Positions 5,390 to 63,713 of a stretch of DNA of 64,000 bases are shown one piece after another. The translations under genes and the position numbers were made by a program. Source of the stretch: Paragordius varius (lineage: Eukaryota > Animalia > Nematomorpha). The DNA lies in the NCBI GenBank assembly GCA_964247055.1, contig OZ176053.1:6386001-6450000 (forward strand). The letters are read 5' to 3'. A model generated the notes under the pieces. It was not told the origin of the DNA, searched no databases, and saw only the letters and a list, made by a program, of their open reading frames with translations. Numbering within the stretch: position 1 is the first letter of the stretch; every line of letters starts with the position of its first letter.

Positions 5390-5962
5390 CACTTCGATTC
5401 AATTTGGGGTATCAAAATACCCCATACTAAGTTTGAGTTAGGATTTTTAAAAAACTACTGAAGGAATCGGTCCCAATTTAAATTTATGCTTCTATCCTAA
5501 TGTATAAATATGCCAAAACATCTAAATAAAATTTTGTTTTAAAAAAAAGTTCCATGTCAAACTACTTCGACGCCATTTTTATTTTGCAAATTTTTTGCAA
5601 AATATCGTCTTGATTTAATTTTAAGGGTAGAATTAAATCTAATTTTTTATTTAGAGTACATCTAAAATTTTGTGAAATAGAAAAAGCGGGTTATTTTGTA
5701 ATATTTTTCAATTTTACCATTGCACACATGTCACGTGACTAAATTTTTACCTTTCGGTTTTAGCTTAAAATAAGTAATATCAAATATTTTTAAATATATT
5801 TTTTTATATATTTTGGTTTTGTAATGTTATATATGTGCAAAATTTTGCCATGGTCTCGATACCTTTCATATTTTTTAAAGAATTTTATTTTAGAGAGGCC
5901 TGGGGAATTTAACTACCCCAATTAGAATCGAAAGACTAAAATGAATGTGTTGTATCCAAGTG
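5390..5962. mobile_element. TTAA-flanked MITE, copy A (piggyBac-like target)
   Basis: TTAA (5386-5389), then CACTTCGAT...ATCCAAGTG, then GTAA. The internal sequence is closely similar to copy B. Confidence 0.7.
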
Positions 5963-5966
5963 GTAA

Positions 5967-6586
5967 CACTTTGATTCAAATTGGGGTATCTAAATACCTC
6001 AGATTTGAGTTAGGATTTTTAAAAAACTACTGAAGGAAACGGTCCCAATTTATCACTTGGATTTAATTTGGGGTATCTAAATGCCCCAGACCAAATTAGA
6101 GTTAAAAAAAAAACTACTAAAGGAAACGGTCCTAATTTAAATTTATGCTTCTATCCTAATCAAAAGTATATGAATTTGCCAAAATATCTAAATAAAATTT
6201 TGTTTTGAAAAAACCATGTCAAGCTACTTGGACGCCATTTTTATTTTGAAAAATTTTTGCAAATTATCGTCTTCATTTAATTTTAAGGGTAAAATTAAAG
6301 CTAATTTTTAATATAAATTACATCTAACATTGAAAGAGATAAAAAAGCGGTTTATTCCGTAGTAATTTTTAATTTTACCATTCCACACATGTCACGTTCA
6401 CAAAATTTCTACCTCTCGGTTTTAGCTATGAATAAGTTATATCAAGTATTTTTAATAAGTGCACAATTTTGCCATAGTTTCGATTCCTTCCATATTTTTT
6501 AAAGAATTTAGTTTTAAACAGGCCTGGAGTATTTAACTACCCCAATTTTAATCGAAGGACAAAAATGAATGTGTTTTATCCAAGTG
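5967..6586. mobile_element. TTAA-flanked MITE, copy B (tandem with copy A)
   Basis: GTAA (5963-5966), then CACTTTGAT...ATCCAAGTG, then TTAA (6587-6590). It contains an extra partial duplication of the 5' block at about 6052-6135. Confidence 0.7.
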
Positions 6587-6845
6587 TTAAAGTGTAATTT
6601 TTAGTGCTGTATGTCAGAATATTTTTTGATTTTACCATTTAATATTTCTTTCATAAAATATTGTAATATTAGGTAAGCCAATAACTTTATTTTTTTCGTG
6701 GATGTGTATAGAGCGTAAACACTTTTGCTTGTGCTGTTTACTGTTGTAGTATGAGGTTTGTAAAACATATATTCATTTTAATTCAGCCGTTTTTTTAATA
6801 AAAATTCTTTAAACCGTCGAAGGAAATTTTAATAGTGGATCACAT

Positions 6846-9800
6846 ATGAAGAAAGTTCGTAATTATAAATTTTCTATCATAAATTCCCCTGGATTCTATG
6901 AAGATGATTTTCAAGCAAACGAATATAAATCATCCCATTCTTTGAGCCCTCATTCTTTAATAAAAAAGGATTTTAATTACGAAAATAACTCGACTGCAGA
7001 TACTCATAAATATAAAGATAATCATTTTCAGCATAATAAAAACAGTAAATTTCGGTTGAAAGATGTAATTTTTTTGGATTCATCACACCATTCCAAACCA
7101 ACCACCAATAAACTTTTAAAAAAATCACGTAATAAATTTTTATTTAGAAATTCTTCCTTATCTCCTATATTAAATTATAAGCGATCATCCAGAAAGATTG
7201 AGTTTTCTCCCCGTTTATCTAGCCTTAATTCACGCAAGCCTATTAAAAAAAGTAAAAGTACCACGAGTTTTGGTTCATTCGATCGTGGGGAATATGCACA
7301 TTCCAAGGGGTTTAGCCCTCACAACGCTTTTAGAGTTACTTTTAACCGTTACTCTCAAGATGTATGTAAATTGTTTGATAAGACACGCATTTTAAATCAC
7401 TTTGATCAACAAACACATCCACAAATTCAATCTTCCTCACATGAGGATACATTGACTAAAAGAAGTAATAAACGGCATTTAGCAACAAATCAAAAAAATT
7501 CTGCTACATTGTTGCCCTTAACACCTGACGATGATTCGAAATTGCTTTTATCACCGGAAACTAATGATGCTATCAGCAACACAGAACTTAAGGATTCTTG
7601 CGATGAACTTGAAGAAAAGGCCGTGGCTTATTCGCCAAATGGTCGATTTATGAAATTCGACGAGGAAGTTGGAAGGGGCTCCTTCAAAACTGTATACCGT
7701 GGGCTGGATACTGAGAATGGGGTTTACGTAGCTTGGTGTGAATTACAGGTATCTATATACATATTTTTACAAATAGATAAAATTTTTGACAGTCTGCTTT
7801 TTATGGAGATTAGTCATAATTAAAAATTAAATGTATGCGAAATATTTTTTTATCGATTGAACCATTTTTTTCTAAGTTTTATGGACATTACGCAGATGTA
7901 TTTTATGTGATATTATCAATATTCGATTTTTTGAAATTCATTAAGCAAATTTGTATTTCTTTTTAATGAGTTAAAAATTTAAATTTTAGTGTGAGGTTCT
8001 AATATCCTAATTGTCTGCAACATTTTTAGCGATGTGTTTAGGTGAGTTAGTACACTTTATAAAATATACGTGACCAGATAAAGGTGTGCTAACCATTCGT
8101 TTTTTAATCTAAACATTATATGAAAATATTTTTTTAATAAATATTTGTTTTAACCATAAACTATTATAAATAATTCGAATACTATATACATTTTTCACGA
8201 ATTTTAATCTTTCAGATGATGATTACATTTTTCTATTTTTAGCACTCTTATTATAACTGTATAATATAACTAACAGCTTTTTCGGTTCATTTGACTATGT
8301 ATGCGCTTTATGAATTTTTGGTTTTCTTATGATATTTTAAAAACAATTTTTGGAAATCAAATCACGTACTAACTTTATGAGTTTTGACCTAAGTCTTATA
8401 TGATAAACATTGTATACTTCATGCACATTTGAAAAAAATTTATATGTAAAATATTTGGGTGGATATTGATAATATAATAAATATATTTAAAAAATATTAG
8501 TGATATAACTCATATATATATTGGATAATTTTGTAATAACTTTTATTGCGTGCGTGAGTATGTGGAAAGGTGGATTATCAATAAATTTTTATATTTATAA
8601 CAACCATATAGCTCTCTTTTTATGGTATTATAAAGATTTAAAAATGTTATAATTAAATATGCAATTATCGATTAAAAATGATGAATCATGATTGGGTTAT
8701 GATGTGTGGAGAGACACATGTATGTCTATTGCTAAATGGCAAGCAATCACATTACAGTTATAGCTATAGTATTGGTTATATAGTTTAAATTGGAGAATAA
8801 ATTTTAAAATTAAACCAACCCTTGCTTACATATTTAAATTTTTTGCCCATCAATATATTTTTTTAAACTATATATTGAAAAAATTAATAATAAACAACCT
8901 TAAATATATTAATTGGTAAAAAATGCAAAAACTAATTACATGTTCATTTCCATCCATGTACGTGAAAAAAAAACATTTATTTTTTAACCTTAATTAGGGG
9001 AAAAACCAAATCAGAATAACAATTTTTTGTGAACAATGTTAAACTTATTGTATTGTACCTAGATAAGGTATTTACCAATTTTACATTTTTATTACAATGT
9101 AGAATAAAATCCGCTCAAACAATTATAATGGCGTAAAATAATGAAAAAAATGATCAAATTGTAGTTAAATTAATATATAATAATTAATAATTTTAGGAAA
9201 AAAAGTTATCTAAAGCTGAGCGCCAACGCTTCCGTGAAGAGGCCGAAATGTTAAAGAATCTGCAACACCCAAACATTGTCAGATTTTATGATTATTGGGA
9301 GATGCTTATGCCCAAACGCAAAATTATAGTTTTGGTGACGGAACTTATGACATCCGGGACATTAAAAACGTAAGTAACTTTTTTATTTTAATCCAATTCA
9401 ATTTTTTTTATCCAAAATTAATCGTTATGATTGATTGAGTGACAAGATATTCCTTGCACAAAAACAAACAAATTATTTAACCTTGATATTACAATACTAT
9501 ATTTATTTGTAAGTGTTAATCCGATAAAATAGAGTGAGTGACCAATTTAGTAACAATATTTGTTTTATTTGTAAATTTATTTATCTACTAAAGCCTCTGT
9601 ATTCAAAATCGAACAAATGCTATATTAACCAAAATCATACTCACAGCATAGTTTGTAACAAACGTTTTCTTGTTCCCAGCATACATAAACTTTGTGGGGA
9701 ACGATTTTACTAGGGATTATTTTTCCATATTAGCAAGTTAAGATTTTTTATTGTTTGATAACAAGTGTTAAATTGTTTGCTAAAATATATATGAATGAAA

Positions 9801-45349: not shown

Positions 45350-45474
45350 CATTTCCCAGTCTAAATAAACATTTTCCCAGTCAATCGAAACATTTTCTCA
45401 GTCAATCGAAACATTTTCCCAGTCAATAAAAACATTTTCCCAATCAATAAAAACGTTTTCCCAGTCAATAAAAA
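45350..45474 (+). repeat. 21-bp minisatellite, 6 units (CRTTTTCCCAGTCAATMRAAA), left TIR
   Basis: Units counted directly. Confidence 0.9.
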
Positions 45475-45831
45475 CGGTTTTATTTTTGATGATAAATATC
45501 AAAACAAGATATAAAAATAACTTTTAACCATTATCATCGTAATATTAGGATATTATTTTTTATAAAAACACAATTATTATATGACAATTCTAAATATATT
45601 CCAGTGCACAATCATCAATGACTTATTCTTTAAAAATTATATTTTTGGAATTTGAGATGTTTTTAAGATAAGATTTTTTATTAATGGTTCGCATTAATAT
45701 TTGCCGAACGCTTCAAAACAGTTTTTAAACATTTCAAGTTTTTCCATTAGAATACTGTCGGAAAAAAATTCTAAACAAAAATTTTTTTCGATAAATTTAA
45801 AAATATTAAGTAAAAAGATATTTGACTAAAA

Positions 45832-46105: not shown

Positions 46106-46482
46106 AACCAAATGATAAATATTAAAATTAGGGTAAAATTTATGTTTAAGATCCAATAGGAGGTGTTAAATGACCTTTCAGATAAAAATGGTATATTTTT
46201 ATAAATTTTATTATTTAATCCGTAACTATAGATTTTATAATTTAGCCACAGATATTGATGCGAACCATCGATAAAATAAAAAATCTTATCTTAAAAACAT
46301 CTCAAATTCCAAAAATATAATTTTTAAAGAATAAGTCATTAATGATTGTGCACTGGAATATATTTAGAATTGTCATATAATAATTGTGTTTTTATAAAAA
46401 ATAATATCCTAATATTACGATGATAATGGTTAAAAGTTATTTTTATATCTTGTTTTGATATTTATCATCAAAAATAAAACCG

Positions 46483-46692
46483 TTTTTATTGACTGGGAAA
46501 ACGTTTTTATTGATTGGGAAAATGTTTTTATTGACTGGGAAAATGTTTCGATTGACTGAGAAAACGTTTCGATTGACTGGGAAAATGTTTCGATTGACTG
46601 GGAAAACGTTTCGATTGACTGGGAAAACGTTTTGTTTGATTGGGAAAATGTTTCGATTGACTGGGAAAACGTTTATTTAGACTGGGAAATGG
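46483..46692 (-). repeat. 21-bp minisatellite, 10 units, right TIR
   Basis: Units such as tttcgattgactgggaaaacg counted directly. This is the reverse complement of the left array. Confidence 0.9.
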
Positions 46693-46966
46693 TATATATA
46701 AAAAAATTATAGTGCCAATATATGTTAGAATAAAAACGAACATAGATTTGTTTTAACCTAAAAATGGAGATATTGATAAATAATTTATTACATTGTCACA
46801 TATACATTGTAAATATGATTAATTACATAGCTGGTATCTGATATATAACCTTATGTAATTAGCTAAAATAATAAGTCACATATATAAATTTTGGCATTTT
46901 TATCAGGATTGCGCTAAATGTTTAATTATAATAACTATCGATTTCTTCCTTTCAATAAAAGAAAAA

Positions 46967-49900
46967 TCAAAAATTTTGCAAAATATTGCACAAAAAGGCT
47001 TTTCGTTTTTTATCTAAGAGATACTGTTGATGAAGTAATAATTCATTAGTTAACATATCATTGACAATATGAGAATTATCCTTGGATGATCCTGTAACAT
47101 CAACTAATTTGGCAGAAGGTCGTATCAATATACGCCCAAAGATTGAAGCTAATTATTAAATAATTAAATCAAATCCATAATGATTTTTACTTTAAAAAAT
47201 AAGTATGTGATAATCAATATAAGAGAGAACAATTTAAAATATACCTAATAATTCATAGCTAACGCCATTTTGCGAAGAATAATCTAACAAGCATTGCAAA
47301 AATGCGACCAAAAACTTAAGAGTATCACGATGTACTAGAGGCATTTTGTCCATTATCTAAATATGTAGGGAAAGAGTTTTATTTATTTTTTTAACCTTAA
47401 ATACGCTTAACAACATTCAAATACATCTAAAAGAGAAAAACCGATACGGGGGTTAAAAATTATCGTAAATATAAATCACTTTAATCTTATTATTACTTGG
47501 ATTTTATAAAACTGGGCTAATTTTAGCAATTGTGATGGTTTAAAATTTGTAACCAATAATAAAAAGTAAAATAATCATTAAAACTTATTTTATTGATTAA
47601 AATAATATCAGTACACAGTCTAAAATTCCAACGTTCCGCCGTAAATATTATAATTGAATAATAAATTTGATCTATAAAAATGTTGATTTACTTCTCCAAT
47701 ATGGGGAAAATTTTCATTAATATTCTTACGAACCCTCCTACGAGCAGGCGGAATTGGCAATGATGTTATATTGTTGGGGTTTTGTTTGGCATTATTGGTT
47801 GATGCATGAAATGTATGTGTTGAATGATGATTGTGATGGTCTTTAGTTATTTGCCCTAATATATTTATCAAAGTAAAAATGATTGGAATGCCTTTTTTTT
47901 AAATGAGACGATTGGCAAAAAAAATATTAAAACAGTAATGAAACTGATTTTAAAACCGAAAAAACCTTTAAACGGTCCTGAAGCCGTATATAATTTGTTT
48001 TCTTTTTTAAATCAATCAAATATTGGCTTTTTTATTGGAATTTTATTATAAAATTATTAATTGTTAAGATTTTTTCAGAAAAAATATAATATATTTATAT
48101 TTTTATGGTTAGACGGTAAGATTAAATAGACAATAAAATAAAACAAATTTTCCTAATATAACATTTCGTTTTAGGCTAATAAATAAAAACGTAAATTGGT
48201 AACATAAAACATTATATGCAATTGTAATCATAAATGTTATAAAGGAAAAATCGCGGTTCAAAAAAGTATAGCTGTATTAAAAAAATATTTGTCCTCTATT
48301 TTCTTTGTCTAAATATTTTAAATTTTTGCTATAAAAATATTTTATTTTATCACACACTCTAATGACTAAAAGGCATATCAAACCTTCTAAATTAGTTTCA
48401 TCAACCTCTTCATCAACGTGCAAAACAGTAGAAACCAAATTTTCATAAAATTTGACTGGAAAGACGGGTTCGCGCAAAGCTTCGAGAAATATTATAAGCG
48501 CATCGCAAATGGAATGGACGTCGCATTCTGTAATATGGAGAGATTAAATTTATTTTTTTCCCCATAAAATATAAAAATTGAAAATATAATCAAAACGAAA
48601 AAAATATACATGTAAAAGTCATAACTCTTCTTTAAAAAGGAAATAATAATATATGAATGATTTCAAATGCAAAAACAATAGAAAAAATTAAGAGACAAAC
48701 AAACATGTTTAACTTTAAATTATAGTTATGATACCTTTAATTAATGAGGTGCCAAAGTCAAGCGAATCTCGAATTACATTTATCTCTTCGATTGGCCCAG
48801 GTTTTTGAAACAAATCTGGCTAAACCAAAAATTTAATTTTCTCATAAGTTTAAATTTTAAATACTTAAACAAAATTTATTAATTGAACCTAACTCGCGCC
48901 GTTAATAACACTAATCTTCCTGATAAAATGTATTTTATTGATTATTTGAAAAAAACACCCTATTTTAATTTAAAACCTTTTATATTATTGATATACTAGC
49001 TGTATATTCAACCCTAAGAAAGCCATCTATAAAACCCCTATATCTTACTGATTTACAATATGGTGTTTTTATTTGGGGATTATTCTTTTTAATGGTTAAA
49101 ACTTAGCTTTAGAAGTTGGCTATGACCTTATTTTTGTCCATATAAATAGATTGTATTGCAGTCTTATAATGACAAATTTAGCTTGTATATACATTATTAA
49201 ATGCCCTTTGTAAATTGATTATATATAAATTATGTATAATGGTTAAAATATACCGCTTTTATCCCTCGTTCCAAAATTTGTGCTACCATAATCCAAATTT
49301 CGCACGGGACATGTGCGTTGAGATCTAGGAGCGAAAATGATAAGTAATTTTTAGATTCTATATATTTTATTGCATCCTTTTTATGATTTTGCAGAATAAG
49401 ATTGGTCGGGATATCAGTTTGCGCAGTGGGATCATTTACTGCATGTTGGGATAATTCGTCGTCAAACTACATTGCAATATGGTAAAAGTATTTAAATTAT
49501 TGCATACATGAAAATATGGAATCATAAACACAAAACAAGACTAATATTTCTTTGTAAAGATCAAAAAATTTTAACCTTGATTTTTTTATGCATAACCAAT
49601 TGTTTGAGTCCCATAATAGGGAATAGATATGTAAATTGACGCCACCTCAAATATATAGCAAATTGTGATTATTATTTAGGTTATATAAAATATCAATTAA
49701 AAAGTATGGATGTCTACAGGAAATGTGAAATTAATTTGGAAAAACCCCAAGTCCAATAGTTGTGTAATAAGCTAACACGCACGAAACTAGTAATTACCAT
49801 TGATAATAGTTTTCTTGTATCGCTTTATATTAAATTTTTTATTACAATTTGTTTTTTTAGCAATTTTGCAATTTTTTATTGTTAATAAATTACTATGTAA

Positions 49901-52693
49901 TTGTAAAAAACTTACATATAGTTAAAATAATTGTTTCATGTTACAATTCACACAAAAATTAATAAACTTAATAAATTCGTTTTTTATTTATATAGAAATT
50001 CGGATAATGATATGAAAAAATTAAAACCAAATCTATCAACGGTTTTTCAACCGCACTATGGTAGGGAAGAGCGCCCTTTTCCACCATTTCTTCCAAAGAT
50101 GCTCCGAAACAACTTTTTACATACGTACCGATAACCGATATGTGTAAAGGGCAACGGATATTTAACAAAGAGTTAAGGTTAATAAACTTAAAAAAAGGGG
50201 TAAACTATACTTTAAAAGTTGTATAACAAAATATATGAAAAAAAAGGATATGAAAAAATCTTTTCCGTTTTCCAAATGCAATATAAGTATATCGTCAAAT
50301 GAATCAGCGCCAGAATTCAAGAGGGGTGCTTGTGTTTTTGTGACGCAACATGTGATTGCTATGGGACATTCTTCGCCTTTAAAAAGGAACAAAAAACTTT
50401 ATAACAAAGTATTTTTGATTTTAAACCCCATATAATGTGATTACAACTATCTTATTTATTCTTTTAGCGTAAAAAATTCCAAAATATCTAAATGTATTAA
50501 ACAAAAACATAAATGATAAAATGGTCTTATAAAACAAAATATATCCGTATTTTGCAGTTTTAATATCGAAATATTAATTAAAAAAATCGTTTAAATTTCA
50601 ATTGAATTGGTATGATAATCACCAAATAACTTTCTTAAATTTAAAAAAAAAAGATGACACTCTGAAAAGTTTAAATATGATTTCAATATAAAATTCTATA
50701 TTAATAAAACTCATTATTAATATGAAATATATGTTTATAGTATAGTTTATATTTTTTCAGTATTATTTTAATTTAAAACAAAATTTTTATTTTTTAAAAA
50801 ATATATAAAATATAGGTAATTTTTAATCTTAAAAACATATATTTTATTTGAGGGTGAATTTGAATTGTTCGAGGGTGAATTTCAATTGTTCAAGGGTGAA
50901 AATGAATTGTTTAAGGGTGAAATTGAATTGTAAATGGTATATAATTATTTAATGCCAGCCAAATAGATTGAGAAAATTAATTATTGAATATATTTATTAA
51001 TCAAAAGCAAACTTAATATTTTGGACAAATATACAGTTATTAAAAAAACTTACCTGGGTAAATAAAATTAGATTCGGCATATTTGTGGGGAGAAATCGAA
51101 AGCCATGATTTACATAAAACCTTGGTACCAAATTTGGGTGTAAATTCGAATTGAAGTGGGACCTGTCCGACATTCGTCAAAGTGATATGTTTAGTTTTCT
51201 TCTCCATGAAATGCGTTTTATTAAAATTAACCTGCAAAAATATAAATATTTAAAAATTTATATGCGGCGATTGAAAAATTAATATATATTCGGATTAATA
51301 AATTATTCATTTTTAGTTTATATTTAATTTTATTTTTACGTTTGACAAAAATTACTTGTCGTAATGAAAATTCACTTTAATAAATTCATTCAATTTAGCT
51401 GATTATAATCCCAATATTAATATTATATATATTATTTTAAACAAAATATTAAAGAATGTGTGTAACCATTGAATTTATTCGTGATTATATAAATATTAAT
51501 AAAAATTACTTCCAAAGTATCTAATTCGGCATGTGGTAAATATTCATTTTCAATTTTATCAATATTTTTCATAGCATGCTCATACACCTGTTTAAAGCGG
51601 CTTTGGTCTGTAATATTGAGCTGTAAAGATGACAAAAAGTTTATGATAAAAACAAAAAGTTTCATTTGTGATTTTAGGATAGAACCCATAAAGACCATAT
51701 ATAATATAAAGAGCAAAAAATCTTTCATACATACCTTTAAATTAAACAGAGCGCTAACTGGTTTATGATCACTGAGCCTTAATTTTGGATGACTTCGATA
51801 CCGGATAAGAATAATTTTTTCAGGATTCAGGGATCGCCATAGAATTCTATCACACCATGAAGGGACACGTGCTTTTTCACTGAGTACAAAATAAAAATTG
51901 TTTTTAATTCATTATAATAATCTCAACAATAAATTTGATAGATATTTAAAACATAAATTTTGGTATATAGTTATTTCGTTATGCGTATAATTATTTATAA
52001 AACATTAGGATATATATTAGTAATCATAATGATTTAAAACAAATTTATATAAAACTAACCTAGTATCATAATGATCAGTTCCCGGATCATATTTATAGGT
52101 TGGGGGGAAATCAATGGGTCCCTCTTCGAAACCGTCAAATATTCTTCCGAATTCTTTTTGGCGAGATAACTACAGAAAATAATATTTATGTAAGGCCGAT
52201 TGAAATAAATATTAACACAAAAATTATGCGCCAAATACTTAATATTGAGCATTTTAAACTAAAAGTAAATTAATATTTTGAAGTTAGGTAACTTAAATTA
52301 TATGAATAAAGAGTATGTGAAAAAAATAGTTGACAAATCGTTATTTAATACAAAAAAATATTTTCTAAAAATTAAAACAGATCATATTGGAATGTTTTCA
52401 TATTATTAATTATTCATCAAAATAAATCACTTGATCAAATTTCATGAGCGTATCAATTTGATTGTTTGATATTTGTTCCTTAGCATGTGATTGATTATCG
52501 ATATCGATGCGGTAATTTAGATCACCAAACCAAAATAAGTAACTATTTTTAATTTATGTAGCAACAAAATTGTAATAAATTAAAAAGACAAGGATAATAA
52601 ATATTTTACTCATGATCCAATATACTAATGCCACCAAATTGATTGAATTGAATTTTATTGGCTATATCATTATAATCCTATCGAAAAAAAAAC

Positions 52694-52730
<37 letters not shown>

Positions 52731-54647
52731 AATTAAAAATTCATTTATCGAACTTGATTCCGTCTTTCCAATTCATCGGGATGTGCAGCAAAATGTGAAT
52801 TGACAAAACACAAAGGCGTTCCGTATAGAGTAAAACGGATGGCAACACCACCTTTATTTCCCTATTAAATTAAATTTAATGTTTAATAATGAAAATTTTC
52901 AATATTTAAGTATTAAAATTTATATTTTGTTTTTTAGGTGGCAAAATAAATTTGCCCATAATTAATTATACGGAATTAATGATTTTGCATATGTCAGATA
53001 TATATATGACAGAGAATTGTTATGACCAATCTACAATGTGAAAATGATAAAAAAAATAATAATAGCGTAAAAATGAAAAAAGTAAAACTCTATATATAAA
53101 CATTTTCTTAAAAATGAAAAAAAGTCATCTGGAGATTTTTTATTTCATGTTCGATTTAATGTTTACTGTTTTGTTGGCACAATCGAATGTAATTATCAAA
53201 GAAAAGGTATACCATTTTTCCTAGCAGACCTGTCCCAATCGTTTCACTCCCAATGTCACTTATGTGACGCAATAAATCCTTTTTGACAAACACCACCAAC
53301 ATTATACCTACATATATAAGACAAAACAACCATTTAAATACTTAATTTCTACTTTTATAACAAAACAGAAATTCAAAGTACTCTTGCCGCTTATTGTAAA
53401 ATAAAATTTAACATGCAAATATGGATGAAAAATGGGAATGACCGTATTATTAAAACGTCATATTGATAATTAAAATTGAATATTTGTTTCAATAATTATA
53501 CGGAATTAACTTACCGACAAGCCTGACCAAATGTAATTTTACGTAAGGAGAAAAGGGGGTAATTTCTTCAATCTCAGTATCCTTAATTTCAAGAGCAGGG
53601 TGCAATGATGTTTTACGCAAAGCATTTGGATGAGTTTTTATATGAGAATCTGCCATTTTTCCATCATCATTATCGCTAAAATTCTCAAGTTTTCTGGTTA
53701 AATTGGTGACTAGATGGCCCGCCGAAGACATGTCTGTATTATCATCTATTAAAGAGGCTCTTGGTGTGCTGTAACGAGAATGTGAAAGTATACTATCATC
53801 AGATGCCAAATTTAAGGCCTCTAACCCAATATCTGATGGAGGGTGGTGTGTTGTACCTATATATTGAATGATAAAAAATGTTGGTTTTTGATAGAATAAT
53901 GCGAAACTTATAGTACACCATAAACTATTAAACCCAAAGAAATTATTGATCAAGATATGATTAATTTTAATTTTGCAATGCCAAAATTAGATCCAAATTT
54001 ACAACAGAATTATATACGTAAAGTCACATTAAAAAAACCTTTACCCTGATCATGAGATGAATATTTTTCTTTCATTCTGGACAGAATTTTGTCAGATTTT
54101 TCGGGCTGATCAGAAGTGTCTAAAAGAGAGGATGAGGAGACATGTTTGAGAGATGATTGCGTTTCTTTTGGCAATTTTTGTTTGTTAATATTTTGTGAAT
54201 ACTTTTTGGGACTGATATAGTAATTTTGAATATTTTGGCTAATGTTTCCCCATTTTTTACCATAATACTTGTTGTAATGATTAACAACTTTTCTTAAACA
54301 TTTATCACAAGCAGTTAACCATTCTGCTTCTTTGTGAGATTCATAAAAAATATATGCCTCGGTTCTTAAATCCAATTCCTGAAAACTAAAAATAATTTAT
54401 TATTAACCCCAGCGCAACAATATCGGCAGGCTTAGATGATTCTTCAGGATAATCGCCCAACCAAGGTGACAAATCTTCATTAACTGTTTGGCCATTAACA
54501 TTCCAAGAGCCAATAAAAATCCTTTGATGAAATTATATAAAACTTAATATCCTTTTCCTTTGTAAATTCACTTTTATGCTTAGACAAATGTTCTTTTATC
54601 ATTTCATCCCTGTCTATCACAGGTGGTTTCGTAAAGAATTTGCTCAT
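46967..54647 (-). CDS. OCRL: OCRL/INPP5B-type inositol polyphosphate 5-phosphatase with ASH and RhoGAP-like domains, 20 exons, at least 988 aa
   Basis: [89 protein letters not shown] motif [15 protein letters not shown], RhoGAP VPCEIW and [13 protein letters not shown]. Exons (-): 54544-54647, 54408-54521, 54045-54385, 53515-53856, 53213-53307, 52754-52861, 52610-52677, 52431-52542, 52060-52169, 51735-51879, 51510-51620, 51054-51231, 50252-50376, 50028-50141, 49254-49466, 48735-48819, 48384-48527, 47692-47855, 47245-47356, 46967-47148 (2967 nt). The start codon is uncertain; the frame is open to an acceptor at 54747. No CAAX. Confidence 0.92.
50142..50251 (-). other. U12-type (minor spliceosome) AT-AC intron, 110 nt
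   Basis: 5' site ATATCCTTT, branch-like CCTTAAC at 50172-50178, 3' site TTTACAC|. Removal gives GKDFF-ISVIGTY, a gapless match to OCRL GKDYF-LTISGNY. Confidence 0.85.
50705..50939. mobile_element. 5'-truncated copy of the small TACCATT foldback family in an OCRL intron
   Basis: Four 21-bp units (AGGGTGAATTTGAATTGTTCG-like) end in AAATGGTA|TA. The body matches 57990-58213. Confidence 0.75.
54386..54407 (-). other. Ultra-short 22-nt GT-AG intron (OCRL, inside the Gly of GFQE)
   Basis: GTTAATAATAAATTATTTTTAG. Removal gives DIVALG-FQELDL. Confidence 0.85.
54522..54543 (-). other. Ultra-short 22-nt GT-AG intron (OCRL, before [10 protein letters not shown])
   Basis: GTTTTATATAATTTCATCAAAG. Removal gives [16 protein letters not shown]; retention leads to a stop at 54495-54497. 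Confidence 0.85.
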
Positions 54648-57616: not shown

Positions 57617-60600
57617 TTAAAAATACCATTGTTTAGCTTCTTCAATTGAAACAAGTGGTCCATATAACATTTCATACTGGCGCAGTTTAAACTTAGCCAC
57701 AATCAGGCTCTGTTGCATTTTCCATTCTTTTGTTTTGCAGGTGAGATTATTGCAGTGGTGTATTAAAAATCTATTTTTGGCTTCTTGCACCGTATTTTCA
57801 AAAGATAACGTTTTGCCCATGTTCTAAATTAGTCAGAAGAAGTTTTTAATTACTACTCATATAAAAGTTAACACTAACTTAATATACCATTAACAATACA
57901 ATTTCACCCTTGAACAATTCAAATTCACCCTCGAACAATTTGAATTCACCCTTGAACAATTAACTCACCCTAAAAACAATTATGTGTTTTTGAACTAATT
58001 TAACTCATTATTTATATAATATATATCTTTATGGCATAGTTTATTATTTTTATTTTAAACAAAATTATATTTTTTAAAAATATATTAAAATATAGGTAAT
58101 TTTTAATTTAAAAAAACACATAATTGATTTTAGGGTGAATGTGAATTGTTCGCAGGCGATTCTTCAAGGTGAATTTTTGAATTGTTTAGGGTGAATTGGA
58201 ACTGTAAATGGTATAATATAAAATTAGAATAGATAAATAAACAATAGACTTTATAATAATATTGCAAATATTTATAGTCAAAGTCATTGCAAAGAAGCTA
58301 GACACCTAAGTTTAAATAAATATGATAATATATATCATTATACCAAAGATATTAAGCCACAGAGGCCGTATTTGTCGATTTTGCGAATATGATTGCGCAA
58401 AAATTTGAAATATATATGTTCCAATCCCAATAATAGTAAGCTTAGAACTATCCCAGCACCCAATAATGTGAAGGCCGAAATGAAATTTCTAAGACCTAGG
58501 GGGTGACTTGTATCATTTTGATTTTTCTTAGTTTTGCAATCTCCTGCCAGCCAAAAATGTTGCAATCGATCCATATCGCCTGCATAATAAATTAAAACAA
58601 ATTTTACAATATATTATATGGAAGGAAGAGCACAATAAAAAGAAATTTTAAGTGTCAGTATTAACTATAATCATTCGAGTCGCTTTTGACTAAAAAAAAT
58701 TGTTTAATCATTGGATGGCTTACTTAGGTTTGCCGGAACCATAATAATAAAAACAATACCGTTTTCCTGATACTTCATAAGAGTTGAATCAACTATTGAT
58801 TTTAAATCAGAATCTTTTGGGAAGGCCAGGGAATAGCCAGTCATAGCAAACCAGGATCCAACCGTCAATATTTTGCATTGATCATCTCTTCCCACAAGAT
58901 ATTCGAGAACGCGACCATCATAAATAAAAGCATCCAAACTTCTAAAATTAGCAATTTTATGAATAGTTTATCAAATGGTAAAAAAAATATTTTTATTTTA
59001 CCCATTTTTTACGGCACTAATTCCGTCTCGAACGTGACTTTTATTGTATATTTCCATATAGCTATACATTTCAGGATAATTTCGTTTTATGTTCAATGCA
59101 GATGGGCTGAACATTACAGTTCCATATCTGAACGGAGGCTCTTTTAGATAAGGATTACGTAACTAAAAAGTTGACATAAATTTAAACTTTTTATACAAAT
59201 AAAGAATGATTTTTCTGAAAATCTAATCATCTGTGCCTAGGCTCCGTTAGTTTTTAATTATATTTATATGCCATAATAAGACTAATAAATTTTGTTTGGT
59301 TATTGACCGTTCAAAAAAGTATAACCGATTTAACAGCTTTAAAATGCAGTCTTTCGTAGGCATAAGTCAATCAATATTACATTATATGTTGTAACTAAAT
59401 TAAAGTTGCCTAATCTATTTTATTTAAGCTTTTACCATAATCTATATATTTAATTACACGAAATAATTTTTTGGGCTTAAATGAATTTATGAATGCTTGT
59501 CGAACCCAAAATATTTTAATTATTTTAAGTTTTTCTTCAAAATTTTTATAATATTGTAAAAATTTTAATAAATGATTCACCCTTGTATCATGTATGCCCA
59601 CAAAATCGTAATGATCCTCTTTGGAAATCATAAATGCTGCCAAATTCGCCGTATAACTTGCAATAAACACCATGGCAACCATGGACCAAATCGTTATAAG
59701 GTAGCGACTTGTGTGACTTTTTGGCACATCAACCTGCACCGAAGCTCCAAACAAAATGGCCCATGCTAGCCATATAGACCGGAAAACGGAAAAATTTATT
59801 GGTTGAACTATGGAAGAAAATAATTCCTTTAAGATCAGCAATTAGATGGTATGAGTAAATATACATTTCTAGTTTTTTTCATAAATTATTGCCAGATAGC
59901 ATTTTTCAGCAAAGGGAAAATTTATTGGCCTACATCTATTTTTTTCACTTTTTACTGTTATCAGCCAGTAACAATGATCTTTGATGTTTTTGTTTTCTCG
60001 CAATAATTATTGAAAAACTAGCAATGTATATTTAATCATACTGTTTTAATAACCTTTATTAGAGGATTTGGTGTCGTATCTTGGACTAATATACTCATAT
60101 AAGAATATGGATAACGCAGCAGCATGTATGCAAATCAAAAGTATTAAGATCCAAGTCAAATAATCAAACGGTTCTAGGAATAAAAAATTTAGGTATTAAA
60201 ATTGAGTTCTTGCATAAATAAATAATGCAATTAGACCGAACCCACATTGGCATAAAATATACCGGCGAAAAGAAAATTTTATAGATACTTTTGTATTGGT
60301 GTTAATATATAACATATTAATATGATTTGTAACAGATTAAATATTTTAAATGATATTTCTGGCGTATTAAATTTTAACATTAGATTAAAAATAATAATTA
60401 TAAAAAATAGTCTTTCATATACCTTAAATTATAATTTTTTTATGATTTTAAAGAAAAATAGATTAATTGTGATTTAAAATACCAATTAACCGCACATGTC
60501 TTAAAGATGCGTTTATTGCGACATATGCTAAATTAGGCAATAATTTCAAATTATTATGGTGTTTTCATAGTCAAAGTTGTAAGTCAAAAAATCTTTTATC

Positions 60601-63600
60601 TGTCATTTTCAAATCGATTTTATATAAAATAAAAAAATCCTACCCAAAAATGCGATAGGAGATATAGAGCCAGTTCTGAGCGAAACCGCAATAGCAATAC
60701 CCGTTTCCAAAAAAGGGATGGAGAAATCTATGGTTTGTGAGTGCTGAGAAGTTATAGTAAGGCCAATAGACATATCAAAATGTTCTGCTATAATTTCATC
60801 CACGATAATGTCAGTTTTGCTCTTAATTTAAACAGATAACGATTAATTATTATTACCTAAAAGTTAACTTATCAAATTAAATTATGCAAATATTAAAATA
60901 AAAAAATCATATTAATTGATATTTATTACACAAAAAATAACAATAATTAAGGGACTTTTGAATTTTGAAGAAAATTTATGCTATTAGATCAGCAAATCAT
61001 ACCTTTTTAGCATCTAGGGCATGAGCATCTGTAACATACATTAGCTCATATGAAAAGCTTAAGTCTTGGGATAACTTTTCCAAAATGTCCACAAAGTAAC
61101 CTGAACAACAATGCTTTGTTTTTGACATTCTTTCATTTCTAAATAGGGAGATAATATAGGCTTAATAAGCAAATATATCAAAAAATAAATTTCCTACTGT
61201 AAATATTAAAATCGGTCTGGTTTCAGATCATTCATCTATTAACAAATAAAAAATATAAATACTCCTTGTTACAAAAAGATTTTTTTGGGATTAGAGTTAG
61301 ACCCTGGACCATTTGCTTTTTTGAAACCGATCAGGGTTCCACGGTTATGTTTTAGTAAATTTTAAAAGTATTTTTCGAAAAATGAAATTTTATATGACTT
61401 TTCACAATGTATCAAAATAACAGCTAATTCTGAAAAACCACAATAGGAACTGGAACATATAGCTTTCTTTGACAATTTTTTTTGAAACTGACCCGTTTAT
61501 TTAAGTTTTGGTTTTAAACCTGTGAACACTTTTAACAATGAAAACAATCCTGACTTAGAACTTTTTTGGTATTAATATTTGAATAACCAGCCCCAATTCG
61601 GGGTTAATTTTGCTTACTTTAGTTTTAATGTGTAACAAGCGACACCTCCATCACAACTAGAAGACGAAGACGCGTGTTTTGGTGATCTTAAAACTTTATC
61701 ATTCAAATCCATTGATATGACAAATGGAGATTCTTCTAATGTCAAAATTCTCAGGTGAATACGTTCTGGTATACCCTTTGGTGGCACGTGGGCGTTACCG
61801 GGCCATACAATATCTTTGATTCTAAGTCCACCAGAAGATCTCCAAACACCAATCTAAAATATAGGTGAACTTAGCTCTATTATATATTTTTAATTAGTAT
61901 CAATTAAATTATAACTCGGCGAAATATTTTATATATAATTATTGAGTTTTTGGAACAAACATTATAAAAATAGCAAAGGTGTTATAAATGTGACAAAATA
62001 AATTTTTTTAACCCAAACCTTCGTCCAGGAGCGCTCATTGTTAAAGTTTATTATGTTAAGGATGATGCTTTGAGACACACCAACAGAATCAAACGTTATT
62101 ATCTTTTTATTTGAGCCGTGAGATATGTTGGTATTTAATAGATACCTTTAACATATATAAAATTAATATAAAACGATATTAATTCCTATATTACCGAGCG
62201 CCTATTTACCCTAGCTATTTTACACCAATCAAATTTATTAGGTTAATTTTAGAATTAGCTTTTATATCCATCCCCTATACCGCCTTCTTTCTGCTTTCAT
62301 TATCATAAAACGCTATTAGTTTACTATTTGAAAATAATTGGCCATAGCCATTGTTTGGGATTTATTAAGGTCCATTCATTTTAATATTACATTTTTAAAT
62401 TAATAAGAAATTGGACCGTAAAATTCGATAGTTAATACTTTGTCTGAAGCTCTAAAAGAAATATATTAGAGGGTGAAAAAATTGGGAAAAACAGGCATTA
62501 ACTAGCAATCAGCATACACTGTTTAATTTTTGATTTAAAAAAATACTTAATGTTTCTGTTCCAATGGCTATCTATAATTTACTTAGATTCCACAATGATA
62601 ATCGAAAATGCGTTAAGTCTAAACTATTCACATATTTTATATAAAACCATGTAATTATCTAATACTTGTAAAATAGCTCTCCGAAACCGTTACCATTTTC
62701 TTTTGGCTCATAATTATACAAGTCATCATGGCAAACCAAACTTTTATTGTTAAGCTTTATATAGTTGACGAGAGCAGATTCATTCAAAGTTTTCATCATG
62801 TTGTTGATGGCATCAATGAAAACGGATGCGCCGATTTCGATCTGTTCCACTAAGGATTCAGGTGTAGTATCATAATGTACGCCAAATAAGCCAATAGGGT
62901 ATGTCTATATTATATGTTATACCATATAAACGATTTAGGAATAAATGGAGATAAAATAACTCTCTAAACTTATTAACCATCATTTATTTGTTTTATATTA
63001 TTAGTATTTTTAAAATTGGTAATTTATTAGTATTTAATGCTTATCATAAACCTTTGGACATTTTTACGGTGCCTTGAAGTACAATATATACATATCAAGG
63101 TTACATATTTTTGGGATACGAGTTAAATATGAATATTAGTTATAACTACAAATTATATTTTTTTAAGAGCTCAATATACAGTATGCGCATTTGTTTTAGT
63201 CAAATCACATTATTGTTGGCCAAAATAATAGAGTACCGTATGTTATAAAATAAATTTTGTCTATAAATAAAATAAATTTTTATGTTGTAACATAGAAAAA
63301 AAATGTAATTTTAACGATTCGCTGTTTTTTTACACATACGCTACTATATTGCCATGAATTGACCAACATTAAAGTATACTATACCATAATTTGGGATATT
63401 TGTAAATTTAAATATTTATAGCCCTTGTTGAAAAAATACTAAAGTGGCTAAAGGATTCGATTTTGGCTATATATCAAAAAGTTATATCTATATTGAAATG
63501 CTCGCAAGCCCTCAAACCCGTAAAAGATACATTTTTTCAAAACATATACATCACAGGGATATTCAACCTATCCGATTGATAGGATTTATAAATGTACGAT

Positions 63601-63713
63601 AAATTATTATACATTATTTTTATCAAAATCGGCAAAATCATTGAAATCACCAACAACACATTGAGTTACGATCCACATATAATCCGTTCCAGTGATTTGT
63701 AGTTTATTTGCCA
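57617..63713 (-). CDS. Nmdar2: NMDA-type ionotropic glutamate receptor, GluN2/NR2-like subunit (5' part unresolved or outside the window)
   Basis: [69 protein letters not shown] (M1), [10 protein letters not shown] (M2), [11 protein letters not shown] (M3), [33 protein letters not shown] (M4). The tail GKTLSF..HCNNLTC..WK resembles Drosophila Nmdar2. Exons (-): 63613-63713, 62666-62904, 62019-62145, 61618-61853, 61003-61138, 60644-60821, 60054-60173, 59581-59807, 59002-59162, 58760-58941, 58344-58579, 57617-57823. Phases are consistent. Confidence 0.92.
57885..58213. mobile_element. Complete copy of the small TACCATT foldback family in the last NMDAR intron
   Basis: TA|TACCATTAACAAT, then 21-bp units (AATTCAAATTCACCCTCGAAC-like), mirrored by AGGGTGAATT...AAATGGTA|TA. 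Confidence 0.8.

What the first reader, a model, noticed from the sequence alone, without database searches (positions are those of the whole stretch)
59100..61030. NR2-like NMDA receptor subunit has lost the canonical glutamate-binding residues
Seen: S1 reads [15 protein letters not shown] where GluN2A has SLTINEERSEVVDFS, so the Arg that binds the agonist alpha-carboxyl is His (codon 60741-60743). The loop NGKHG...WNG is replaced by [15 protein letters not shown], which disturbs the aromatic lid. S2 reads GTVMFSPSA for GTVPNGSTE (Ser to Pro, Thr to Ser; 59100-59108). The YD motif and the gating SYTANLAAF are intact and the frame is open over 12 exons, so this is not a pseudogene. Known: this Arg is nearly invariant in ligand-binding iGluRs. 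Inference: a glutamate-insensitive, alternative-ligand or modulatory NMDAR subunit.
Basis: partly seen in the sequence, partly recalled or inferred. Interest (0 to 1): 0.72.

Follow-up and report, generated by a model that had tools for sequence, protein, structure and literature searches.

The report
Hairworm NMDA receptor subunit without glutamate-clamping arginine
The only NMDA-receptor "glutamate-binding" (GluN2) gene of this horsehair worm is intact and under selection, but it lacks the arginine that every other known GluN2 uses to hold glutamate, so hairworm NMDA receptors probably do not sense glutamate in the usual way.

Summary
A minus-strand gene has 15 GT..AG exons, 12 of them in the window, and encodes a 1104-aa GluN2 ortholog. 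Alignments to solved GluN2 chains place His (codon 60741-60743) at GluN2A R518, a one-residue deletion at S511, Pro at S689 (59103-59105) and Ser at T690 (59100-59102). The S1 hairpin (KWG...WNG) is rewritten.

- **Conservation elsewhere:** all 111 other protostome GluN2 proteins compared keep this Arg and both Trp/Gly motifs. So do a nematode and a hagfish GluN2.
- **Ortholog:** the closest relative is the GluN2 of the hairworm Gordionus. It has Asn at the Arg site, so the loss is old and lineage-wide.
- **Selection:** synonymous sites between the two worms are saturated, yet the pore region is 90% identical. Within-species variants are 12 synonymous to 4 conservative replacements.
- **No backup:** the genome has no second GluN2 and the locus has no alternative S1 exon.
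- **Partner subunit:** GluN1 keeps its Arg but carries T518I, S688D and D732E.
- **Human precedent:** GluN2A R518H gives no current even at 10 mM glutamate.

The most likely reading is a functional channel subunit that no longer binds glutamate canonically. No RNA or physiology was available. This is a new variant of a known kind.

The parts
63613..63713 (-). Exon 4 of 15 (amino-terminal domain). Exons 1-3 lie beyond the window end at window-equivalent 64075-64223, 65623-65816 and 65974-66795, with the ATG at 66795.
   Evidence: Spliced mapping against the Gordionus ortholog, GT..AG borders
62666..62904 (-). Exon 5 (amino-terminal domain)
62019..62145 (-). Exon 6 (end of amino-terminal domain)
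61618..61853 (-). Exon 7: start of S1 ([13 protein letters not shown], with the E413 equivalent kept), a variable loop and two S1 cysteines
61003..61138 (-). Exon 8: S1a, containing [11 protein letters not shown] and the first half of the rewritten hairpin ([11 protein letters not shown]). The KWG motif of other protostome GluN2 is H-A-L here.
   Evidence: Pfam PF10613; alignment columns
60644..60821 (-). Exon 9: S1b, containing the second half of the hairpin (SKTDII in place of ..WNGL.), the S511 deletion, T513 kept, and His at the R518 position
   Evidence: Alignment to PDB GluN2 chains; Pfam; 111/111 Arg in other protostome GluN2
60741..60743 (-). Codon cac = His at the GluN2A R518 position (model residue 695). 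Gordionus has aat = Asn.
   Evidence: contig of run X6 identical over 60713-60863
60054..60173 (-). Exon 10: pre-M1 and M1
59581..59807 (-). Exon 11: M2 pore loop (LFGASV) and M3 with [11 protein letters not shown]. It is 93-96% identical to Gordionus.
   Evidence: Pfam PF00060, E 1e-16
59002..59162 (-). Exon 12: S2a, GTVMFSPSA, with Pro at S689 (59103-59105) and Ser at T690 (59100-59102)
   Evidence: Alignment to PDB GluN2A
58760..58941 (-). Exon 13: S2b. FIYD (Y730, D731 kept), a hairworm-specific Arg two residues after D731, the S2 cysteine, and TGY (Y761 kept)
   Evidence: Alignment to PDB GluN2B/2A
58344..58579 (-). Exon 14: end of S2 (second S2 cysteine) and M4
57619..57823 (-). Exon 15: start of the C-terminal domain. 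The frame runs to a stop at 57619. A further 3' exon, as in Gordionus, was not excluded.

Best explanation
This is the single GluN2 (NMDA receptor subunit 2) ortholog of a horsehair worm. It is a working channel-forming subunit.

On the hairworm stem, after the split from nematodes, lobe 1 of its ligand-binding clamshell was rewritten:
- The arginine that clamps the agonist's alpha-carboxylate was lost. It is His here and Asn in Gordionus.
- S511 was deleted.
- The KWG...WNG hairpin over the pocket was replaced.
- In this species, S689 became Pro, which has no backbone N-H.

The pore, the gating helix, the disulfides and the pocket residues that also matter for folding and trafficking (E413, T513, Y730, D731, Y761) were kept under purifying selection.

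I infer that the subunit no longer binds L-glutamate in the canonical way. My favoured reading is that its clamshell survives as a structural and gating module that needs no amino-acid agonist, an 'agonist-blind' GluN2. Control of the receptor would then fall to the GluN1 site, which is also modified, or to voltage and other signals.

Shown: the sequence facts, orthology, uniqueness in the genome, the shared loss in two genera, and selection. Inferred: loss of glutamate binding and the mode of gating.
For: - Residue mapping onto solved GluN2 chains.
- Arg 111/111, the hairpin Trp residues 110-111/111 and both Gly 111/111 in other protostome GluN2. The nematode Haemonchus and a hagfish also keep WNG and/or Arg.
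- Gordionus ortholog P0001/P0154 has Asn at the site and the same S511 deletion and hairpin loss.
- In the tree the two hairworms form a pair (support 100) with a long stem of 0.71 and short tips of 0.2 and 0.07. They sit inside protostome GluN2, separated from the genome's own GluN1-like gene.
- Radical replacements at conserved columns are confined to S1. Seven of 12 there score BLOSUM62 <= -2, against 0 of 11 in M1-M3 and 0 of 7 in S2.
- Between the genera pS exceeds 0.75, while dN is 0.075 in M1-M3, 0.16 in S2 and 0.42 in S1.
- Within-species coding variants are 12 synonymous to 4 conservative. I estimated this by hand at P about 2e-5 if neutral, assuming about 24% synonymous sites.
- The genome holds one GluN2-like locus only, with no alternative S1 exon.
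- The other iGluR loci of the same genome keep the Arg.
- In human GluN2A, R518H and S511L give no current at 10 mM glutamate, and R518A raises the EC50 to about 8.9 mM. Residues whose alanine mutants cut surface expression most (Y761, Y730, E413) are the ones kept here. Those that matter least for surface expression (S511, S689, H485) are the ones lost (PMC12199545).
- Pocket positions differ between the two worms (H/N, P/S, hairpin tip). This fits relaxed constraint better than a new specific ligand.
- An AlphaFold model of the Gordionus LBD-TMD is confident in both lobes (pLDDT 85-95) but below 50 at the hairpin tip. Its 50 best PDB matches are all GluN2 chains.
Against: - There is no RNA, cDNA or physiology for either worm. 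All runs that hold the locus look like DNA.
- T513, D731, Y730, Y761, E413 and a Ser at T690 are kept and could still serve a ligand.
- Both worms carry a new conserved Arg two residues after D731. It could supply a replacement cation, and its orientation could not be checked.
- In rat GluN2A, engineered pocket mutants (D731L/F) lose function rather than become agonist-independent (10.1101/2023.08.03.551817). An agonist-blind GluN2 therefore has no experimental precedent.
- Only two hairworm genera were available.
Confidence: 0.45

Rival explanations
1. Alternative-ligand GluN2. The remodelled pocket binds a different small molecule, for example one with an amino group but no alpha-carboxylate, and that molecule gates the receptor together with the GluN1 site.
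For: The amino-group contacts (T513, D731) and the distal-group contact (Ser at T690), with Y730, Y761 and E413, are kept. What is lost is specifically the alpha-carboxylate clamp: R518 in both worms, and the S689 N-H in this species. There is precedent in insect IRs and in other iGluRs with changed key residues, which are proposed to sense other molecules (PMC6307864). S2 remains well conserved between the worms, with dN 0.16.
Against: The substituted pocket positions are not conserved between the two hairworms (H vs N, P vs S, and only about 4 of 13 hairpin residues shared). A specific new ligand would predict conservation. The kept residues also have folding and trafficking roles.
Confidence: 0.25
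2. Still a glutamate subunit. Glutamate binds with low or moderate affinity through compensating residues: protonated His here, the new Arg after D731, or a rearranged hairpin.
For: A hairworm-specific Arg at D731+2 is conserved in both worms, where 104/111 other GluN2 have Thr. His can carry a positive charge. Most of the pocket floor is kept.
Against: Gordionus has Asn, which is uncharged, at the site. Human R518H, R518L and S511L give no current at 10 mM glutamate. A residue at +2 on a helix would normally face away from the residue at 0; this is my own geometric reasoning and was not modelled. Pro at S689 removes a backbone donor in this species.
Confidence: 0.2
3. A decaying gene, or one re-purposed for a non-channel role: a relic GluN2 on its way to loss in a parasite with heavy gene loss.
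For: The genome has few iGluR loci, about 7. S1 and the amino-terminal domain evolve fast (dN 0.42-0.51). No RNA evidence exists.
Against: There is a 1104-codon open frame with 14 clean introns. The gene is also intact in Gordionus despite saturated synonymous divergence. The pore and M3 are 90-96% identical. Within-species variants are 12 synonymous to 4. The disulfide cysteines are kept.
Confidence: 0.05
4. Artefact or RNA-level rescue. The His is an assembly error or a rare allele, or A-to-I editing turns CAC into an Arg codon in the mRNA.
For: CAC is one edit away from CGC, and iGluR transcripts are classic editing targets. Not every read-level difference was displayed.
Against: A contig from another study (X6) matches exactly over the codon, and no variant at 60741-60743 is listed in four runs. 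Gordionus has AAT, which editing cannot turn into Arg. No inverted repeat pairs with the codon. The S511 deletion and hairpin loss are independent of this codon.
Confidence: 0.03

Closest known systems
Protostome GluN2 (Drosophila Nmdar2, nematode NMR-2 type) and vertebrate GluN2A-D
   Same: Full ATD-S1-M1-M2-M3-S2-M4 layout. [11 protein letters not shown] gate. The M2 loop LFGASV is like chelicerate and annelid GluN2. The S1 and S2 disulfide cysteines, Y730-D731, Y761 and E413 are present. The tree places the gene inside this clade, and its ortholog's best structural matches are GluN2 chains.
   Different: It lacks R518 (His here, Asn in Gordionus) and S511, and it lacks the KWG and WNG motifs that 110-111 of 111 members keep. 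It has Pro at the S689 position.
Human GRIN2A p.Arg518His (Landau-Kleffner / epilepsy-aphasia variant)
   Same: The same residue change at the same position.
   Different: In humans it is a loss-of-function allele, with no current at 10 mM glutamate (PMC12199545; 10.1101/2020.08.06.240010). Here it is the fixed wild-type state of the only GluN2 gene, embedded in further pocket changes.
GluN3 subunits (GluN1/GluN3 glycine-gated receptors)
   Same: An NMDA-family partner of GluN1 that yields receptors not gated by glutamate.
   Different: GluN3 keeps the Arg and binds glycine. This gene is not GluN3 by the tree. Solved GluN2 chains are the best matches for three of its four S1/S2 exons; the first, weakly conserved S1 exon matches GluN3A marginally best (E 0.013).
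Insect ionotropic receptors (IRs) and other iGluRs with changed key ligand residues
   Same: iGluR-fold subunits that lost one or more of the Arg/Thr/acidic triad and are thought to sense other ligands (PMC6307864; the point about IRs is from my own knowledge).
   Different: Those are expanded, divergent paralogs outside the NMDA clade. This is the one-to-one GluN2 ortholog, with its amino-terminal domain and NMDA-type pore.
Trichoplax AKDF leak channel and GluN1-D732L/F (agonist-independent iGluR subunits)
   Same: They show that a pocket substitution can free an iGluR subunit from needing its agonist (10.1101/2023.08.03.551817).
   Different: There the change is at the acidic residue (D732 equivalent), which is kept here. 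The equivalent GluN2A mutants lose function instead of becoming constitutively active.

Membership tests
Ionotropic glutamate receptor superfamily | Bipartite S1/S2 ligand-binding domain interrupted by an M1-M2-M3 channel, then M4 | tested here: met
   PF10613 on exons 8 and 9 and PF00060 on exon 11. The order of exons is colinear with the Gordionus protein, which carries PF01094, PF10613 and PF00060.
Ionotropic glutamate receptor superfamily | SYTANLAAF gating motif in M3 | tested here: met
   [17 protein letters not shown] is encoded at 59581-59807.
GluN2 (NMDA receptor subunit 2) | Orthology: groups with GluN2 rather than GluN1, GluN3 or AMPA/kainate | tested here: met
   The best solved relatives of three of the four S1/S2 exons tested are GluN2A-D. 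The tree puts the hairworm pair inside protostome GluN2, separated from the own-genome GluN1-like gene by a branch with support 97. All 120 best relatives listed for the ortholog are annotated or Pfam-typed as GluN2-type iGluRs. GluN3 was not in the tree, and the first S1 exon's weak best hit was GluN3A (E 0.013).
GluN2 (NMDA receptor subunit 2) | GluN2-like three-dimensional structure of LBD and TMD | tested here: met
   Tested on the Gordionus ortholog as a proxy, not on the window protein. The model has mean pLDDT 72.9 and both lobes at 85-95. The top 50 Foldseek PDB hits are all GluN2 chains, with E about 1e-40.
GluN2 (NMDA receptor subunit 2) | Arginine clamping the agonist alpha-carboxylate (GluN2A R518) | tested here: not met
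   His here and Asn in Gordionus. Arg in 111/111 other protostome GluN2.
GluN2 (NMDA receptor subunit 2) | Remaining glutamate contacts: S511, T513, S689, T690, Y730, D731, E413, Y761 and the H485 lid | tested here: inconclusive
   Kept: T513, Y730, D731, Y761 and E413. T690 is a conservative Ser. Lost: S511 (deleted), S689 (Pro) and the H485/Trp lid (Ala).. The S689 and T513 columns vary among invertebrate GluN2 anyway.
GluN2 (NMDA receptor subunit 2) | Conserved D1 hairpin motifs (K-W/H-G and W-N-G) | tested here: not met
   W-to-A, G-to-L, W-to-T and G-to-I at columns that are 110-111/111 conserved. The same columns are changed in Gordionus.
GluN2 (NMDA receptor subunit 2) | Gating by L-glutamate with GluN1 as obligatory partner | not testable with these tools
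   A GluN1 ortholog exists in the genome (L001). Assembly and agonist response need expression and recording.

The most novel reading that the evidence does not exclude
Hairworms run an NMDA receptor that is not a glutamate receptor at all. Both subunits (GluN2 without its Arg; GluN1 with T518I, S688D and D732E) have abandoned the canonical glutamate/glycine co-agonist scheme. Either an unknown ligand gates the channel, or the GluN2 clamshell is permanently 'satisfied' and the receptor works as a voltage- or modulator-controlled cation channel. This would be the first natural NMDAR without a glutamate site.
Probability: 0.3. Interest if true: 0.8.

Novelty: new variant of a known kind. Interest (0 to 1): 0.62.

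Why it matters
The alpha-carboxylate-clamping arginine is treated as the signature of amino-acid-binding iGluRs, and in humans its replacement by His is a null disease allele. Here the same change is the fixed state of an animal's only GluN2, kept under selection in two genera. That is a natural experiment on what a GluN2 clamshell does when it no longer binds glutamate. Two questions become directly testable in oocytes. Can an NMDA receptor gate with an unliganded or differently liganded GluN2? Which compensating changes allow folding, trafficking and gating without the agonist? It also bears on how the nervous system of a behaviour-manipulating parasite with heavy gene loss is wired.

Tried and rejected
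- **Word-index search with the S1b exon.** It found no candidates, so no further hairworm fragments could be added.
- **Exact look-up of P0001.** It failed. The longest isoform, P0154, gave the Gordionus locus L006.
- **P0156.** It looked like a second close relative (681 bits). It is an ordinary GluN2 with Arg and WNG whose score is inflated by an internal duplicated segment. P0002 shows the same kind of artefact.
- **dN/dS.** No ratio could be given because synonymous sites are saturated (pS 0.78-0.98 in the domains). I report dN by domain and the within-species synonymous-to-replacement count instead.
- **Alternative canonical S1 exon.** None was found in the window plus 10 kb upstream, or by the family profile genome-wide.
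- **Editing-type inverted repeat at the His codon.** None.
- **RNA evidence.** No run on record as RNA holds the locus, and the laid contigs cover introns, so they are DNA. Table 3 omitted 159 rows, so a minor allele at the codon in run X1 is not strictly excluded.
- **Joined model.** The joined 1104-aa model was built and aligned only inside local scripts. It was never sent to a search or folding tool. Exons were searched one by one by reference, and the Gordionus protein served as the proxy for folding.
- **Tiny introns.** Earlier notes report 22-30 nt introns in this genome. None is needed in this gene; its shortest intron is 60 nt (58942-59001).


Full report
**What is in the window**

The window is AT-rich (GC 21-36%) and belongs to a 110.5-Mb, 44-contig animal genome. 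On the minus strand, stop-free segments between about 63700 and 57600 spell an ionotropic glutamate receptor. Pfam finds the ligand-binding family PF10613 on the two S1 exons and the channel family PF00060 on the M2-M3 exon.

I mapped the exons against the closest relative, with borders chosen to keep frame and GT..AG. This gives 15 exons, 14 introns of 60-1399 nt, an ATG at window-equivalent 66795 (2.8 kb beyond the window end, read from the genome as L005) and a stop at 57619. The product is 1104 aa.

**Checking the observation**

The S1b exon (60644-60821) aligns to solved GluN2A-D chains at E about 1e-8. In native GluN2A numbering the alignment covers 497-547. It puts the window's His (cac, 60741-60743) opposite R518, T opposite T513, and a one-residue gap opposite S511.

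The S2a exon aligns to GluN2A 672-723, with Pro (59103-59105) opposite S689 and Ser (59100-59102) opposite T690. The S2b exon aligns to GluN2 with Y730, D731 and Y761 kept. The first S1 exon keeps the TLEE motif (E413).

The stretch from VT to the S1 helix has the same length as in GluN2A but shares almost no residues.

**Is the change more than ordinary divergence?**

A profile-free search of 1.8 billion representative proteins with the M2-M3 exon returned GluN2-type sequences. A word search with the closest relative returned 120 proteins annotated or Pfam-typed as GluN2-type iGluRs, from arthropods, annelids, molluscs and nemerteans.

In an alignment of 111 of these, the Arg is present in 111/111. 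The hairpin Trp residues are present in 110-111/111 and both Gly in 111/111. Y730 and D731 are present in 111/111. A nematode (Haemonchus) GluN2 keeps WNG and Arg, and a hagfish GluN2 keeps the canonical S2.

By contrast, the S689 column is H/N/S and the T513 column is K/M/T in these invertebrates. Pro at 689 is nevertheless unique, and it removes a backbone N-H that contacts the alpha-carboxylate in GluN2A (contacts as listed in PMC12199545).

**Whose gene is it?**

The best hit, P0001 with its isoform P0154, is annotated as 'glutamate receptor ionotropic, NMDA 2B-like' of Gordionus sp. m RMFG-2023, a horsehair worm. It is 96% identical in M2-M3, 73% in S1b and 58% overall.

Gordionus has the same S511 deletion and the same loss of KWG and WNG. 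It has Asn (aat) where the window has His, and Ser-Ser where the window has Pro-Ser.

In a maximum-likelihood tree the two hairworms pair with support 100. The stem is long (0.71 changes per site) and the tips are short (0.20 and 0.07). The pair sits inside the protostome GluN2 group, and a branch with support 97 separates that group from the genome's own GluN1-like gene. The AMPA/kainate-like genes served as outgroup.

The loss therefore happened on the hairworm stem, after the split from nematodes, and was followed by slower evolution.

**Is the gene alive?**

Between the two worms the synonymous sites are saturated (pS 0.78-0.98 across the protein's domains), so the split is old. Yet both frames are open. 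dN is 0.075 in M1-M3, 0.16 in S2 and in M4, 0.42 in S1 and 0.51 in the amino-terminal domain.

At columns that are at least 95% conserved in other GluN2, the hairworms' shared replacements are radical only in S1:
- S1: 7 of 12 replacements score BLOSUM62 <= -2, with a mean of -1.25.
- M1-M3: 0 of 11, with a mean of +1.36.
- S2: 0 of 7, with a mean of +1.14.

The four S1 cysteines and two S2 cysteines are kept.

Contigs of four public runs from three studies cover the locus, introns included, so they are DNA. Of the 16 listed coding differences from the window, 12 are synonymous. The other four are conservative: I1001L, F861Y, H682N and V639M. With roughly a quarter of sites synonymous, that split has a probability of about 2e-5 under neutrality; this is my own binomial estimate.

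No difference is listed at the His codon, and a contig of run X6 (another study) matches exactly over 60713-60863. Because the tool omitted 159 rows, a minor allele in the deepest run cannot be strictly excluded.

**Is there a canonical copy or exon elsewhere?**

Profile searches of the whole genome with PF00060 and PF10613, and a protein search with the M2-M3 exon, find about seven iGluR loci:
- this gene;
- a GluN1-like gene on contig 3;
- two kainate-like genes;
- three near-identical AMPA-like copies on contig 7.

None is a second GluN2. These searches score only the best candidates, so a very divergent copy could be missed. All the other loci keep the Arg. Canonical S1b segments from 111 GluN2 proteins, plus the Gordionus segment, hit only the known exon in the window plus 10 kb upstream.

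**The partner subunit**

The contig-3 gene is GluN1 by its best solved relatives. It keeps P516, R523 and W731. It has Ile at T518, Asp at S688, Glu at D732 and Q-R-A in place of WNG, in a loop four residues shorter. In human GluN1, D732E alone raises the glycine EC50 1457-fold (PMC12199545). Both agonist sites of the hairworm NMDA receptor are thus non-canonical. Gordionus GluN1 could not be reached with the tools.

**What the change should do**

In human GluN2A, R518H, R518L and S511L give no current at 10 mM glutamate, and R518A shifts the EC50 to about 8.9 mM. R518H is a loss-of-function epilepsy allele that still reaches synapses.

In the same study, alanine mutants lowered surface expression in the order S511A > WT > S689A > T690A > H485A > T513A > R518A > E413A > Y730A > Y761A. 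The residues the hairworms kept (Y761, Y730, E413, T513) are those most needed for a well-behaved protein. Three of those they lost (S511, S689, the H485 lid) matter least for surface expression.

The replaced pocket positions also differ between the two worms. The AlphaFold model of the Gordionus LBD-TMD is confident in both lobes but not at the hairpin tip, and all of its 50 best PDB matches are GluN2 chains.

Together this favours a clamshell kept as a structural and gating module whose amino-acid site is no longer used. I put that at 0.45. Rivals:
- A new ligand that needs the amino-group contacts but not the carboxylate clamp (0.25).
- Residual glutamate binding through compensation (0.2). 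The best lead is an Arg two residues after D731, present in both worms where 104/111 other GluN2 have Thr.
- Decay (0.05).
- Artefact or editing (0.03). Gordionus's AAT cannot be edited to Arg, and no editing-type duplex is seen.

A caution applies to the favoured reading. Engineered GluN2A pocket mutants lose function rather than become agonist-independent, so an agonist-blind GluN2 would be new biology.

**Comparison and novelty**

By architecture, tree and fold this is a GluN2. It fails the family's most conserved functional feature, the Arg, and the two hairpin motifs. Full-text searches found no paper on hairworm NMDA or glutamate receptors. The broad survey of metazoan iGluRs treats Arg plus the acidic residue as the mark of amino-acid ligands, and it did not include Nematomorpha (PMC6307864). 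I class the finding as a new variant of a known kind.

**Limits**

There is no RNA and no physiology, and only two hairworm genera were available. The joined protein model was used only in local scripts. Database, family and structure tools saw single exons by reference or the Gordionus protein.

Noticed in passing
L001 (G000:C3:722000-731999), + strand, about 5461-8438: The GluN1 ortholog of the same genome keeps R523, P516 and W731. It has T518I, S688D and D732E, Q-R-A in place of WNG, and an S1 loop four residues shorter. D732E alone lowers glycine potency 1457-fold in human GluN1 (PMC12199545).
   Followed up: partly
G000:C7 at about 5.644, 5.876 and 6.073 Mb (L004 holds the first): Three near-identical AMPA-like iGluR copies lie about 200-230 kb apart, which suggests a recent segmental triplication. 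The whole genome shows only about seven iGluR loci.
   Followed up: no
window 57779-58315: A very high-copy repeat sits in the intron before the last mapped exon. Summed contig depth is 10^5-10^6 against about 500 for neighbouring sequence, with many internal joints. It includes a 21-nt tandem repeat at 57892-57961. A second, weaker repeat lies at 59927-60105 in the M1/M2 intron.
   Followed up: no
window 59110 and 60782: There are replacement polymorphisms inside the ligand-binding domain in other samples: F861Y, two residues before the S689 position, and H682N in the S1 helix before the pocket strand.
   Followed up: partly
window 58760-58941 (model residue 907): A hairworm-specific Arg lies two residues after D731 ([10 protein letters not shown]). 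It is conserved in Gordionus, where 104 of 111 other GluN2 have Thr. It may be a compensating charge. Its orientation was not modelled.
   Followed up: no
window about 47000-54550, minus strand: The neighbouring gene is an OCRL/INPP5B-like inositol 5-phosphatase with a RhoGAP-like tail. Motifs such as [16 protein letters not shown] and PSWCDRILW appear in the frame listing. Earlier notes of the scan report 22-nt introns and an AT-AC intron in it.
   Followed up: no
window 46433-46795 and 45364-45523: Tandem repeats stay open in all three minus-strand frames (for example TFSQSIE units), downstream of the phosphatase gene.
   Followed up: no
P0156 and P0002 (database proteins): Two public GluN2 entries carry an internally duplicated M2-to-M4 segment. 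This is probably an assembly or annotation artefact, and it inflates their scores.
   Followed up: partly
L006 (Gordionus locus), P0154 versus P0001: Gordionus isoforms differ by a 16-residue insert right after S1, before M1. Whether the window gene has an equivalent alternative exon in the 470-nt intron 60174-60643 was not checked.
   Followed up: no
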